Below, one piece after another: positions 13,669 through 25,666 of a DNA stretch of 64,000 nucleotides. The position numbers and the translations under genes were made by a program. The first letter of the stretch is position 1. Each line of letters starts with the position of its first letter. The DNA is from Macrostomum lignano (lineage: Eukaryota): assembly GCA_002269645.1 (NCBI GenBank), contig NIVC01001643.1, forward strand, positions 62,001-126,000, given 5' to 3'. The notes under the pieces are model-generated. The model did not search any database, had not been told where the DNA came from, and was given only the letters and a program-made list of their open reading frames with translations.

Positions 13669-13892
13669 AATTGCTAATCTAGCCAATCACAGATCAATTG
13701 GAATAGAATGGATTGCTAAACTAGCCAATCACAGATCAATTGGAATAGAATGGATTGCTAAACTAGCCAATCACAAATCAATTGGAATAGAATGGATTGC
13801 TAATCTAGCCAATCACAAATCAATTGGAATAGAGTGGATTGCTAATCTAGCCAATCACAAATCAATTGGAATAGAATGGATTGCTAATCTAG
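13669..13892. repeat. 42-bp satellite, short intronic array (about 5 units)
   Basis: Unit GATTGCTAATCTAGCCAATCACAAATCAATTGGAATAGAATG. Confidence 0.95.
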
Positions 13893-13946
13893 TAAAACAC
13901 AAAATTATCGACCAGACTCTCATACCAATTGCCTCATCTTTCACAG

Positions 13947-14887
13947 GCATTCATCTCTGCGATTTGTGGATCTGTTTCGACATTCTGTGCTGTACAGCCT
14001 CCATCCTTCATCTGGTTGGCATCGCGGTTGATCGCTATTGGGCGGTGACAAACGTTGACTATATTCGAGTTCGGACTGGCAAACGAATTGGCCTGATGAT
14101 AGTTGCCGTGTGGGTCATCAGCCTGGCGATCAGCCTCCCAGCCAGATTCACTCTCACGGACGAGCTTCGCCGAACTCAAATCGCAAACGGCACTTGCGCA
14201 ATCAATGAGGACACGGTGTACACAATTTTCTCTACCGTCGGGGCCTTCTACCTGCCGATGCTGTTTATGATCGCCATCTACATCAAAATCTACCAGACTG
14301 CCAGAAAGCGAATTCGTAAGAAAGCCTTCAAGGGCCAGAACAAAGCGATACAGTTGGTGCAGAACCAGCAGCGCCAGGAATCGAACTTGGGCACACCGCA
14401 AGCGGACGACTTGCCAGAAGCTGAACAAGGCCCCCAGCAGCAGCAGCAGACCACTTCTTTCATTAAATCTTCTGGCAAAGCAAAATTGCAAAAGCTGAAG
14501 AAATTCAAACAGCAGCAGCAGCACAACGGCGATCGCCATGGCGACAGTCACCCGGAGGAACGCCGTCTGACCCCGCAGTCCAAGGCGGCCCACCAGCGCG
14601 AGAAACTTGAGCACAAACGGGAGCGCAAAGCTGCCCGAACTCTGGCCATCATCACTGGCTGCTTCCTGATCTGTTGGATCCCATTCTTCCTCCGGGCAAC
14701 AGTTTGTCCATTCTGTGCGGACCTGTGCTTCGAACTGATCCCAGACTCCGGGCACTCCTTCATCCTTTGGCTTGGCTACATGAACAGCTTATTAAACCCC
14801 GTTATTTACACAATATTCTCGCCGGATTTTCGAAACGCTTTTAGCAAGATTTTGTTCGGCCGCTACCACAGAAGAGGCTACCGGTGA
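13947..14887 (+). CDS. HTR1-like: 5-HT1-type receptor, terminal exon copy 1 (TM3-TM7)
   Basis: ttcacAG|GC acceptor in phase 1; amine-binding Asp in WICFDILCCTASILHL, DRYW, YTIFSTVGAFYLP, RERKAARTLAIITG, CWIPFF, WLGYMNSLLNPVIY; stop at 14887. Confidence 0.93.
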
Positions 14888-16016
14888 GCAGGATGCGATC
14901 AAATTAATGACCAAATAATGATGTAATGTACCTAGTCCACTGTCCACAGATTTCGTTACTATGGGCTTTTGGTTTGTTAATATCGATGAATTAATTTAAT
15001 TGACTCTTTCAAAACAAGTTGCTTGTCTAATACTTGTAATGTTAATTCAACCTGTCGCATCTGAATTGACATCAAGACTGACTATAAATTGCTCTGTTTA
15101 AACAATTTTTAGATTATTTTAAACAAATCAAAACTATTTGTTGGTTAAATCAGCATAAATGTTGTTTTATTTTTGTAGTTAAACTTCGACAATTAAAGTA
15201 TTTTTGCAATCTGTGACAGACTTGATTTTTTTGTTCTAAAAATTGAATTCATGCAACTTTTGTATACGGCATATTAGCACTCCATGACTAATGTACAGAT
15301 GTCTCTCATGTCTACGAGCGTATATGGACAATTTAAACATTCATACGGTCAATGTACGCAATGTCTATAGACCAGTACGTCCATGTCTAAAGAACCAAAT
15401 GAACACACGAAAGTAATGCACTTTAACAAATACAATTGACTGTTAGATAAATACGAAAATACACTTTTCAATTCTATAAGTATATAAATCGTTTTATTTG
15501 TCTTTTGCCTTTTTTGTTTTGTTTAGCAGCAGTGAAAAAATATAGGTCGTATATGGGTACCGCTAATATATAAACATAAACTAATTTTAGATTTTGAATT
15601 AGGTCGATACTCTCGTAATTAAAAAAGAGGCCATCAATATTTTACTAATTGCTAAAATATGAGCCGTGAAAATGACCATCGGACAGTTTAGGCCATATTT
15701 TTTCAGCTAAAGCCAGACAAATTAGATAAAGTGTGCAATAAAATATTTATACATAGTCGACCTGCACTGTCGGCAACCGAGTATTGATGTCTGTTCTAAA
15801 GCTGATATGGTTATTAAAAAGTAGTACGTGCGGCCCTGCTAACTATTTGACTCAATTGATCGTGAAAGTGCAAAAGTGAAATACCAGCTTTTTTGGTAGA
15901 ATCCGTGGTTTAGTTTAAATACTTGCATGAATAAAATCTGAAGGAATTTACCAAAGAATACCGAATACTGCACTGCCAAACTTAATTCCCTGTAATAGTA
16001 GTAATGGTATACAATA

Positions 16017-22939: not shown

Positions 22940-22993
22940 TAAAACACAAAATTATCGACCAGACTCTCATACCAATTGCCTCATCTTTCACAG

Positions 22994-23934
22994 GCATTCA
23001 TCTCTGCGATTTGTGGATCTGTTTCGACATTCTGTGCTGTACAGCCTCCATCCTACATCTGGTTGGCATCGCGGTTGATCGCTATTGGGCGGTGACAAAC
23101 GTTGACTATATTCGAGTTCGGACTGGCAAACGAATTGGCCTGATGATAGTTGCCGTGTGGGTCATCAGCCTGGCGATCAGCCTCCCAGCCAGATTCACCC
23201 TCACGGACGAGCTTCGCCGAACTCAAATCGCAAACGGCACATGCGCAATCAATGAGGACACTGTGTACACCATCTTCTCTACCGTCGGGGCCTTCTACCT
23301 GCCGATGCTGTTTATGATCGCCATCTACATCAAAATCTACCAGACTGCCAGAAAGCGAATTCGTAAGAAAGCCTTCAAGGGCCAGAACAAAGCGATACAG
23401 TTGGTGCAGAACCAGCAGCGCCAGGAATCGAACTTGGGCACACCGCAAGCGGACGACTTGCCAGAAGCTGAACAAGGCCCCCAGCAGCAGCAGCAGACCA
23501 CTTCTTTCATTAAATCTTCTGGCAAAGCAAAATTGCAAAAGCTGAAGAAATTCAAACAGCAGCAGCAGCACAACGGCGATCGCCATGGCGACAGTCACCC
23601 GGAGGAACGCCGTCTGACCCCGCAGTCCAAGGCGGCCCACCAGCGCGAGAAACTTGAGCACAAACGGGAGCGCAAAGCTGCCCGAACTCTGGCCATCATC
23701 ACTGGTTGCTTCCTGATCTGTTGGATCCCATTCTTCCTCCGGGCAACAATCTGTCCATTCTGTGCGGACCTGTGCTTCGAGCTGATCCCAGACTCCGGGC
23801 ACTCCTTCATCCTTTGGCTTGGCTACATGAACAGCTTATTAAATCCCGTTATTTACACAATATTCTCGCCGGATTTTCGAAACGCTTTTAGCAAGATTTT
23901 GTTCGGCCGCTACCACAGAAGAGGCTATCGGTGA
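22994..23934 (+). CDS. HTR1-like: 5-HT1-type receptor terminal exon, tandem copy 3 (intact; one V-to-I change)
   Basis: Same acceptor and length; RATICP instead of RATVCP; usage unknown. Confidence 0.7.
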
Positions 23935-25666
23935 GCAGGATGCGATCAAACTAATGACCTAATCATTATGTAATGTACCTAGTCCACAGTCCACAGATTT
24001 CGTTACTATGGACTTTTGGTTTGTTAATATCGATGAATAAATTAATTGACTCTTTCAAAACAAGTTACTTGTCTAATAATTGTAAAGATAATTCAACCTG
24101 TCGCATCTGAATTGACATCAAGACTGACTATAAATTGCTCTGTTTAAACAATTTTTAGATTATTTTAAACAAATCAAAATTATTTGTTGGTTAAATCAGC
24201 ATAAATGTTGTTTTATTTTTGTAGTTAAACTTCGACAATTAAAGTATTTTTGCAATCTGTGACAGACTTGATTTTTTTTGTTCTAGAAATTGAATTAATG
24301 CAACTTGTTTACGGCATATTAGCACTCCATGACTAATGTACAGATGTCTCTCATGTCTCTCATGTATATGGACAATTTAAACATTCATACAGTCAATGTA
24401 CGCAATGTCTATAGACCAATAGCTACGTCCATGTCTAAAGAACCAAATGAACACACGAAAGTAATGCACTTTAACAAATACAATTGACTGTTAGATAAAT
24501 AGAATACACTTTTCAATTCTATAAGTATATAAATCGTTTTATTTGTCTTTTGCCTTTTTTGTTTTGTTTAGCAGCAGTGAAAAAATATAGGTCGTATATG
24601 GGTACCGCTAATATATAAACATAAACTAATTTTAGATTTTGAATTAGGTCGATACTCTCGTAATTAAAAAAAAGAGGCCATCAATATTTTACTAATTGCT
24701 AAAATATGAGCCGTGAAAATGACCATTGGACAGTTTAGGCCATATTTTTTCAGCTCAAGCCAGACAAATTAGATAAAGTGTGCAATAAAATATTTATACA
24801 TAGTCGACCTGCACTGTCGGCAACCGAGTATTGATGTCTGTTCTAAAGCTGATATGGTTATTAAAAAGTAGTACGTGCGGCCCTGCTAACTATTTGACTC
24901 AATTGATCGTGAAAGTGCAAAAGTGAAATTCCAGCTTTTTTGGTAGAATCCGTGGTTTAGTTTAAATACTTGCATGAATAAAATCTGAAGGAATTTACCG
25001 GAGAATACCGAATACTGCTCTGCCAAACTTAATTCCCTGTAATCGTAGTAATGGTATGCAATATTAGATTGCTAATCTAGCCAATCACAAATCAATTGGA
25101 ATAGAATGGATTGCTAATCTAGCCAATCACAAATCAATTGGAATAGAATGGATTGCTAATCTAGCCAATCACAAGTCAATTGGAATAGAATGGATTGCTA
25201 ATCTAGCCAATCACAAGTCAATTGGAATAGAATGGATTGCTAATCTAGCCAATCACAAGTCAATTGGAATAGAATGGATTGCTAATCTAGCCAATCACAA
25301 GTCAATTGGAATAGAATGGATTGCTAATCTAGCCAATCACAAATCAATTGGAATAGAATGGATTGCTAATTAATCTAGCCAATCACAGATCAATTGGAAT
25401 AGAATGGATTGCTAATCTAGCCAATCACAAATCAATTGGAATAGAATGGATTGCTAATCTAGCCAATCACAGATCAATTGGAATAGAATGGATTGCTAAT
25501 TAATCTAGCCAATCACAGATCAATTAAAATAGAATGGATTGCTAATCTAGCCAATCACAGATCAATTGGAACATACATGCGCAACTTCTGAAATTACGCT
25601 GGCCGTGCGACTTAGTTTTCGATAAAAAATGCGACTTACCTATGAAAGAGCCAAGCAAAAACTTAA

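What the first reader, a model, noticed from the sequence alone, without database searches (positions are those of the whole stretch)
13669..25571. Terminal exon of a serotonin receptor is triplicated in tandem with every copy intact
Exons 1-2 are single copy, but the unit [42-bp satellite, acceptor, 941-nt TM3-TM7 exon, about 1.1 kb 3' flank with AATAAA] occurs three times (periods 4439 and 4608 bp). All copies keep the same acceptor and an open frame. Copies 1 and 3 differ at 12 nt by my count: 10 synonymous and 2 giving one conservative V-to-I change. Their 3' flanks differ by many substitutions and indels. This synonymous bias means both versions diverged under purifying selection. Inference: either alternative last exons giving one receptor with different 3'UTRs, or two formerly allelic/homeologous versions fixed on one chromosome.
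Basis: partly seen in the sequence, partly recalled or inferred. Interest (0 to 1): 0.72.

Follow-up and report, generated by a model that had tools for sequence, protein, structure and literature searches.

The report
Serotonin-receptor last exon repeated three times
The last exon of a flatworm (Macrostomum lignano) serotonin-receptor gene sits three times in a row between arrays of a 42-bp satellite; the middle copy is a clean hybrid of the outer two, which points to unequal crossing-over rather than a regulated alternative-exon system.

Summary
A 2,114-bp module (acceptor, 941-nt TM3-TM7 exon, 1.13-kb 3' flank) occurs three times head to tail, separated by 2.3-2.5 kb of a 42-bp satellite. 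Exons 1 and 2 are single copy.

- Only two sequence types exist, A (copy 1) and B (copy 3). Copy 2 is a one-switch hybrid, B at its 5' end and A at its 3' end, with no private substitution. A-(B/A)-B is what unequal crossing-over in an A-B duplication produces.
- The window is Macrostomum lignano or a very close relative. This neopolyploid has three subgenomes that differ by 1.1% in coding sequence and 2.2% overall. A and B differ by 1.28% in the exon and 1.99% overall.
- The strong synonymous bias (11 synonymous, 1 non-synonymous, omega 0.03) therefore fits divergence as separate functional versions before they were joined.

Nothing supports regulated alternative last exons: copies 1 and 2 encode identical protein and have identical 3' flanks.

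An assembly error that strings subgenome versions together cannot be excluded without reads (about 0.25).

Verdict: an ordinary, well-resolved example of a known mechanism, of modest interest.

The parts
1627..1923 (+). Exon 1 of the 5-HT1-like receptor: ATG to donor CAG|gtaaga, N-terminus and TM1. Single copy.
   Evidence: tblastn with homologs; sequence; spliced translation
7340..7448 (+). Exon 2 (TM2): acceptor ttgcag|AGT, phase-1 donor G|gtgagt. Single copy.
13670..13903 (+). S0: a short array (5.6 units) of the 42-bp satellite in intron 2. It ends 43 nt before the exon-3 acceptor.
13904..16017 (+). Module copy 1 (type A): 43 nt of intron, exon 3 at 13947-14887, 3' flank at 14888-16017 with AATAAA at 15737 and 15930.
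16018..18342 (+). X1: 42-bp satellite array of about 54 units between copies 1 and 2.
18343..20457 (+). Module copy 2 (hybrid). It is B-type at all 6 diagnostic sites up to 18666 and A-type at all sites from 19098 onward. Exon 3 is at 18386-19326.
18667..19097 (+). Interval that contains the single B-to-A switch in copy 2. It falls in the 432-bp stretch where A and B do not differ.
20458..22950 (+). X2: satellite array of about 58 units. It matches X1 unit for unit over the first 46 units and has 4 extra units near its end.
22951..25064 (+). Module copy 3 (type B): exon 3 at 22994-23934 with V>I, 3' flank with an extra AATAAA at 24036.
25065..25571 (+). S3: start of the downstream satellite array, with a different unit-variant pattern from X1 and X2.
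25572..27842 (.). A 2271-bp non-autonomous TIR transposon inserted in the satellite. It has 19-nt terminal inverted repeats and an 8-bp target duplication, AATTGGAA.
27843..30233 (+). S4: continuation of the downstream satellite array (about 55 units).

Best explanation
The gene is a 5-HT1-like class A receptor of Macrostomum lignano or a very close relative. Its last exon and 1.1 kb of 3' flank lie between two arrays of the same 42-bp satellite in the same orientation.

1. **First exchange (inferred).** Misaligned exchange between these arrays placed two versions of the module, A and B, head to tail on one chromosome. A and B had already diverged to the level seen between the species' subgenomes, each as the working last exon of its own gene copy.
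2. **Second exchange (inferred from the mosaic).** An unequal crossover then paired the B module of one chromatid with the A module of the other. It resolved inside a 432-bp stretch of the exon where A and B are identical. The product is A - (B 5'/A 3' hybrid) - B. This is the arrangement of an anti-Lepore globin chromosome or a triplicated alpha-globin locus.
3. **Timing.** The second event is very recent. The two repeats of [A 3' part - satellite - B 5' part] are identical over 3.8 kb and differ only in satellite unit number near one end.
4. **Function (inferred).** All copies are intact because they are young or were recently under selection elsewhere, not because each has a separate role. 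Transcripts most likely splice exon 2 to the first acceptor and end after copy 1. Copies 2 and 3 would then be redundant spares.
For: **Shown by tool results**
- Three head-to-tail copies with satellite at every boundary.
- Every one of 56 variable alignment columns has two states apart from one homopolymer length. Copy 2 follows copy 3 at the first 6 columns and copy 1 at all later ones.
- Unit 1 and unit 2 are identical over 14228-18013 = 18667-22453. The X1 and X2 unit-variant strings are identical for 46 units.
- omega = 0.027, P = 8e-7. If one copy had drifted unused for the whole divergence, 13-19 non-synonymous differences would be expected against 1 seen, P < 3e-5.
- A and B differ by 1.28% in the exon, 2.67% in the flank and 1.99% overall.
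- The 432-bp difference-free stretch is longer than chance allows, P about 0.007-0.011, which points to past sequence exchange between A and B.
- The best protein hit is an M. lignano model at 98% identity.
- The window has no N, so this is not a duplication beside a scaffold gap.
- An older, frameshifted M. lignano gene model (P0003) carries yet another mix of the same A and B states.

**From the literature:** M. lignano subgenome paralogs differ by 1.1% in CDS and 2.2% genome-wide (PMC10733133).

**Inferred:** the order of events, the origin of A and B as separate versions, and the silence of copies 2 and 3.
Against: - No reads, no second assembly and no transcripts could be reached. Neither the physical reality of three copies nor their use is shown.
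- M. lignano assemblies are documented to contain wrongly collapsed, expanded or chimeric subgenome versions (PMC10733133).
- Perfect identity over 3.8 kb is also what polishing gives if one real stretch was laid out twice.
- The two older gene models share an ICL3 variant (CTC, Leu) that none of the three window copies has. B is therefore not simply a copy of the version those models represent, and the history may be more tangled.
- The older models may themselves be consensus chimeras.
Confidence: 0.58

Rival explanations
1. Assembly artefact. Each subgenome really has one copy, or at most two. The assembler strung subgenome versions together through the satellite, or traversed one stretch twice. 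Consensus polishing then produced the mosaic middle copy.
For: - A and B differ by exactly the amount that separates M. lignano subgenomes (PMC10733133).
- All joins lie in satellite arrays, where layout errors happen.
- Copy 2 has no private substitution, and 3.8 kb is duplicated perfectly.
Against: - The 64 kb has no gap, so this is not the usual gap-flanked retained haplotype.
- In a single-copy locus only 234 bp of satellite precede the exon. A false join to a 2.3-kb array would have to ignore the unique intron sequence.
- Arrays differ from one another by about 6%.
- A B5'/A3' junction needs reads that carry it.
- The ends of X1 and X2 differ by four units, so the two units were not built from one identical layout.
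- Copy 2 lacks the 20 or more private differences that an independent third subgenome would show.
Confidence: 0.25
2. The copies are working alternative last exons. Exon 2 can splice to any of the three acceptors, giving the same receptor (or the V/I variant) with different 3'UTRs and poly(A) sites. Selection keeps all copies intact.
For: - All copies keep the acceptor, the frame and AATAAA motifs.
- omega is 0.027.
- Copy 3 has a private AATAAA 102 nt after the stop.
- An older gene model (P0001) joins a B-type exon 3 to a small exon that maps to 31678-31773. This hints that transcription can run through the array.
Against: - Copies 1 and 2 give identical protein and identical 3' flanks, so one of them adds nothing.
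- Copy 2 is too young to have been tested by selection.
- The low omega is explained by divergence before joining.
- The first 140 bp after the stop is the most diverged part of the flank, about 9%, so there is no sign of conserved UTR elements.
- In this window the donor needed for the P0001 tail is GC, not GT.
Confidence: 0.1
3. The A-B tandem duplication is old and predates the subgenome split. It persists in several subgenomes, with gene conversion shuffling A and B states among copies.
For: - Older M. lignano models include a V-type (P0003) and an I-type (P0001) exon 3. Both carry an ICL3 variant absent from the window, and P0003 has a different A/B mosaic.
- The 432-bp difference-free stretch indicates conversion.
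Against: - The two models may come from two single-copy subgenomes or from noisy consensus.
- An old duplicate that was never spliced should show relaxed constraint, which is rejected. This reading therefore needs both copies to be used, or selection acting through conversion.
Confidence: 0.07

Closest known systems
Anti-Lepore haemoglobin chromosomes and triplicated alpha-globin (unequal crossover products of tandem duplicates); also Bar triplication in Drosophila and red/green opsin hybrid arrays
   Same: The layout is parent 1 - hybrid (5' of parent 2, 3' of parent 1) - parent 2, head to tail, with one switch point inside a stretch of identity. Copy number was raised from two to three by misaligned homologous exchange.
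   Different: Here the repeated unit is only the last exon plus its flank, not a whole gene. The primary homology substrate is a 42-bp satellite that flanks the unit. The comparison rests on established knowledge, not on a tool result.
Repeat-mediated (non-allelic homologous recombination) exon duplications, for example Alu-flanked exon duplications in human genes
   Same: Direct repeats on both sides of an exon supply the homology, and the product is a tandem intragenic duplication with boundaries inside the repeats.
   Different: The repeats are long satellite arrays rather than dispersed elements. Because the exon is terminal and carries its own stop and poly(A) motifs, the duplication need not disrupt the message.
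Tandemly duplicated mutually exclusive exons or alternative last exons (for example Dscam exon clusters)
   Same: Tandem copies of one exon, each with its own acceptor.
   Different: Known cases have copies that differ in the encoded peptide and are old. Here two copies are identical and the third differs by V/I. Use of more than one copy is untested.
False duplications in assemblies of heterozygous or polyploid genomes (retained subgenome or haplotype versions)
   Same: The copies differ by the genome's own between-subgenome divergence, and the joins lie in repeats.
   Different: There is no gap next to the copies. The unique flanks are not duplicated. A one-switch hybrid copy is present.
5-HT1-type serotonin receptors (human 5-HT1A/1B; lophotrochozoan 5-HT1-like receptors)
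   Same: Full 7tm_1 domain, aminergic motifs, a long third intracellular loop and a short C-tail. The best solved relatives are 5-HT1A at E = 5e-81.
   Different: Ligand and G-protein coupling are untested. Identity to molluscan and annelid receptors over TM3-TM7 is only 43-49%.

Membership tests
Class A aminergic GPCR, 5-HT1-like | Rhodopsin-type seven-helix domain covering TM1-TM7 | tested here: met
   Pfam 7tm_1, E = 7.6e-67, residues 84-423 of the 448-aa spliced product, profile positions 1-260 of 260
Class A aminergic GPCR, 5-HT1-like | Aminergic motifs: Asp in TM3, DRY, CWxP, NPxxY | tested here: met
   Read from the translation: CFDILCC, AVDRYW, LICWIPFF, LNPVIY. All lie in the triplicated exon and are intact in all three copies.
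Class A aminergic GPCR, 5-HT1-like | Closest characterised relatives are 5-HT1 receptors | tested here: met
   PDB sequence search: 5-HT1A at 5e-81, then 1B, 1D, 1F and 1E, ahead of alpha-2 adrenergic and dopamine receptors. Named database hits are 5-HT receptor or 5-HT1A.
Class A aminergic GPCR, 5-HT1-like | Binds serotonin and couples to Gi | not testable with these tools
   Needs expression and a pharmacological assay
Tandem array made by unequal homologous exchange | Head-to-tail direct copies | tested here: met
   Three plus-strand copies, periods 4439 and 4608 bp
Tandem array made by unequal homologous exchange | Direct repeats at both ends of the unit to serve as homology | tested here: met
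   The 42-bp satellite, in the same orientation, lies upstream (13670-13903) and downstream (16018 onward; 25065 onward)
Tandem array made by unequal homologous exchange | Hybrid copy with a single switch between the two parental types | tested here: met
   Copy 2 is B-type at 6 of 6 sites up to 18666 and A-type at all sites from 19098 onward
Tandem array made by unequal homologous exchange | Single DNA molecules span the array; a parental two-copy chromosome exists | not testable with these tools
   No reads or other assemblies could be reached
Alternative last exons | Each copy has its own acceptor and poly(A) motif | tested here: met
   Identical acceptors; AATAAA at +850 and +1043 in all copies. 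These are motifs only.
Alternative last exons | The copies give different products or different UTRs | tested here: inconclusive
   Copies 1 and 2 have identical protein and flank. Copy 3 has V>I and a flank 2.67% different.
Alternative last exons | Transcripts join exon 2 to more than one copy | not testable with these tools
   No transcript data are available. No near-identical protein from transcript assemblies is in the database.
Assembly false duplication | Duplicate lies next to a gap or contig join | tested here: not met
   No N in the 64-kb window
Assembly false duplication | Copies differ by the between-haplotype or between-subgenome divergence | tested here: met
   1.28% in CDS and 1.99% overall, against 1.1% and 2.2% in PMC10733133
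Assembly false duplication | Reduced read depth per copy and no spanning reads | not testable with these tools
   No reads available

The most novel reading that the evidence does not exclude
The array is a working set of alternative last exons. Transcription runs through all three copies, possibly as far as the small exon at 31678-31776. Splice and poly(A) choice among identical acceptors then gives one receptor with different 3'UTRs, and selection holds the copies intact. That would make it a newborn alternative-last-exon system created by satellite-mediated exchange between subgenomes of a neopolyploid.
Probability: 0.1. Interest if true: 0.55.

Novelty: new member of a known kind. Interest (0 to 1): 0.3.

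Why it matters
If the array is real, it is a compact record of two successive unequal exchanges in a neopolyploid flatworm. The first joined two subgenome-grade versions of an exon through flanking satellite arrays. The second made a hybrid copy.

It would show that the abundant short satellites of M. lignano act as substrates for intragenic copy-number change. It would also show that sequence moves between diverged gene versions, which bears on how the three subgenomes stay distinct or mix.

In practice it is a warning for annotation. Gene models made only of exon 3 (P0001, P0003) are probably by-products of this structure.

If the array is an artefact, it marks a specific type of mis-assembly to look for in this genome.

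Tried and rejected
**Searches that led nowhere**
- I looked for independent DNA that encodes the exon. P0001, P0003 and the window ORF 18403-19326 are not on record.
- I searched the protein database with exons 1-2 to find a full-length M. lignano model and to compare the number of exon 1-2 models with the number of exon 3 models. No near-identical hit was returned; the best were other flatworms at 56-85%.
- Literature searches found no published high-accuracy long-read M. lignano assembly and no description of this satellite.
- I looked for transposon ends at the outer limits of the satellite region (13600-13670 and 30233-30300). Nothing was recognisable.

**Readings rejected**
- *Three subgenome versions strung in a row.* Copy 2 has no private substitution, whereas subgenomes differ by about 2%.
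- *Copy 3 is an old unused duplicate decaying in place.* That predicts 13-19 non-synonymous differences against 1 observed.
- *Other large duplications in the window.* Self-comparison finds only satellites and microsatellites besides the three units.
- *The long antisense ORFs inside the exon (13934-14755 and its copies) and the open frame through the satellite.* I treated these as by-products of composition, not as genes.
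Full report
**1.

A 2,114-bp non-satellite module at 13904-16017 recurs at 18343-20457 (99.67% identity) and at 22951-25064 (97.45%), all on the plus strand. The periods are 4439/4440 and 4608/4607 bp. The modules are separated by arrays of a 42-bp satellite.

Each module holds three parts:
- 43 nt of intron ending in the acceptor ctcatctttcacag;
- a 941-nt exon, open from a phase-1 start to TGA (13947-14887, 18386-19326, 22994-23934);
- about 1.13 kb of 3' flank.

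AATAAA lies 850 and 1043 nt after the stop in all copies. Copy 3 has one more, 102 nt after the stop.

Homolog-guided tblastn places exon 1 at 1627-1923 and exon 2 at 7340-7448, once each. Spliced to any exon 3 copy they give a 448-aa protein.

**2. What the gene is and where it comes from.**

- The product has a complete 7tm_1 domain (E = 7.6e-67).
- It carries the aminergic motifs: TM3 Asp, DRY, CWxP and NPxxY (read).
- Its closest solved relatives are human 5-HT1A (5e-81), then 1B, 1D, 1F and 1E.
- Named database hits are lophotrochozoan 5-HT receptors at 43-49% identity.
- The best hit is a Macrostomum lignano gene model, P0001, at 98% identity. The next nine hits are also M. lignano.
- P0001's odd 32-residue tail maps to the window at 31678-31773.

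The window is therefore M. lignano or a very close relative.

**3. Anatomy of the copies.**

In the three-way alignment every variable column has only two states, apart from one homopolymer length. Call copy 1 type A and copy 3 type B.

Copy 2 carries the B state at the first six variable sites (18447-18666). It carries the A state at every later site, from 19098 to the end of the flank. It has no private substitution.

Aligned as whole units, 13904-18342 and 18343-22950 differ only in three ways:
- the six exon sites above;
- one homopolymer length;
- the last 330 bp or so of the satellite, where unit 2 has four extra 42-bp units and two mismatches.

14228-18013 and 18667-22453 are otherwise identical. 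When satellite units are coded by variant, X1 and X2 have the same string for 46 units. The arrays after copy 3 (S3, S4) and before copy 1 (S0) have different strings.

The satellite reaches to within 43 nt of each acceptor, and it starts directly after each 3' flank.

**4. Selection signature.**

A and B differ at 12 exon positions: ten single synonymous changes plus GTT>ATC (V>I). By Nei-Gojobori counting that is 11 synonymous and 1 non-synonymous difference over 213 and 726 sites. This gives pS = 0.052, pN = 0.0014, omega = 0.027 and binomial P = 8e-7.

If one copy had been unused for the whole divergence, 13-19 non-synonymous differences would be expected. P of seeing one or fewer is below 3e-5.

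The flank differs by 2.67% plus seven indel events. The whole module differs by 1.99%.

The differences are not evenly spread. A 432-bp stretch of the exon (14228-14658) has none, P about 0.007-0.011. This suggests an earlier exchange of sequence between A and B. The switch in copy 2 lies in that stretch.

**5. Context from the literature.**

PMC10733133 reports the following for the inbred M. lignano line:
- About 85% of the genome is present as three paralogous subgenomes.
- Paralogs differ by 2.2% in SNPs genome-wide and by 1.1% in CDS. The figure is 2.5% when indels are counted as single edits.
- The L-S pair differs by 2.41% and the L1-L2 pair by 1.91%.
- The reference assembly contains mis-represented versions, either collapsed or expanded.

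The A/B values found here (1.28% in CDS, 1.99% overall) match that level.

**6. Best explanation.**

The layout A - (B 5'/A 3') - B, with the segment [A 3' part - satellite - B 5' part] present twice in perfect identity, is the expected product of an unequal crossover. The B module of one chromatid paired with the A module of the other on an A-satellite-B chromosome. This is the anti-Lepore or triplicated-globin type of product, a comparison from established knowledge.

The earlier A-B junction is most simply explained by misaligned exchange between the satellite array downstream of one version and the short array upstream of the other.

A and B are as far apart as the subgenomes, and they show strong constraint. 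They therefore most likely diverged as the working last exons of separate gene copies and were joined later. On that reading the synonymous bias needs no present-day use of copies 2 and 3.

I infer, but cannot show, that exon 2 is spliced mainly to the first acceptor and that transcripts end in copy 1's flank.

**7. Rivals.**

*(a) Assembly artefact.* In its favour are the subgenome-grade divergence, the joins in satellite, the perfect duplication and the assembly's known weaknesses. Against it:
- The 64 kb has no gap.
- Only 234 bp of satellite precede a single-copy exon, so a false overlap would have to ignore unique intron sequence.
- Different arrays are only about 94% alike.
- The ends of X1 and X2 differ.
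- The hybrid junction needs reads that contain it.

I put this at about 0.25.

*(b) Working alternative last exons.* The motifs are present, but copies 1 and 2 are redundant in both protein and flank. The proximal 3' flank is also the most diverged part. About 0.1.

*(c) An old duplication shared by subgenomes and shuffled by conversion.* The older model P0003 is frameshifted, and read in its shifted frames it exposes synonymous sites. It is A-type at 14152 and 14704 but B-type at 14194, 14215 and 14224, a mosaic not present in the window. P0001 is B-type at the V/I codon. Both carry a CTC (Leu) variant in the third intracellular loop that all three window copies lack. This shows that the same two-state sites are shuffled elsewhere in the species' sequence data. 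Those models could, however, be noisy consensus. About 0.07.

**8.

The description is confirmed. The purifying-selection inference is confirmed.

This is a clear example of a known mechanism acting on part of a gene in a repeat-rich neopolyploid genome. It still needs read-level confirmation. Interest is modest.

Noticed in passing
window 25572-27842: A 2271-bp insert splits the downstream satellite array. It has 19-nt terminal inverted repeats (CATACATGCGCAACTTCTG / CAGCAGTTGCGCATGTATG, 95%) and an 8-bp target duplication, AATTGGAA. It looks like a non-autonomous TIR DNA transposon, hAT-like by duplication length. It carries CT-rich low-complexity sequence and a 21-bp minisatellite at 27017-27646.
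   Followed up: partly
window 31678-31776 (+): The 32-aa C-terminal tail of the older M. lignano model P0001 maps here at 31 of 32 residues, behind a good acceptor (cctccagcttcag|CC) and ending in TAG. Joining it to exon 3 would need a donor at TTTA|GCAAGA (about 14843), which is GC rather than GT in all three window copies. It may be a rare alternative 3' exon or a prediction artefact.
   Followed up: partly
window 24036: Copy 3 alone has an AATAAA 102 nt after the stop codon. Copies 1 and 2 have their first AATAAA at +850.
   Followed up: no
window 14228-14658 (and the same stretch in copies 2 and 3): This 432-bp stretch of the exon (TM5 and the third intracellular loop, the least conserved part of the protein) has no A/B difference, although about 5 are expected. 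P is about 0.01. It looks like a past gene-conversion tract.
   Followed up: partly
proteins P0001 and P0003 (older M. lignano gene models): Both models contain only exon 3. P0003 reads into the satellite and is frameshifted. P0003 carries a mix of A and B states not found in the window. Both share a Leu (CTC) variant in the third intracellular loop that is absent from all window copies. No database model contains this gene's exons 1-2.
   Followed up: partly
window 7600-10192 (intron 2): An 18-bp minisatellite (CAGCACTTCCCCAAACAC) of 144 copies at 97% match fills 2.6 kb of intron 2. The window as a whole is dense with micro- and minisatellites, for example TATC x 720 at 47692-50544.
   Followed up: no
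window 43042-44211 and 46170-46625 (minus strand): A second class A receptor gene lies on the opposite strand (Pfam 7tm_1 at E = 3e-7 and 4e-3). Its two ORFs are separated by a 21-bp minisatellite at 45227-46168, which is probably intronic.
   Followed up: partly
window 56487-57023 (minus strand): An ORF matches the NAD kinase N-terminal domain (PF01513, E = 3.5e-16) and has the GGDGT motif. It is probably one exon of an NAD kinase gene.
   Followed up: partly
window 13634-14884 and the satellite arrays: One reading frame of the 42-bp satellite has no stop (IANLANHKSIGIEW repeated) and runs in frame into exon 3. This produces long spurious ORFs and probably misled the older gene model P0003.
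   Followed up: no
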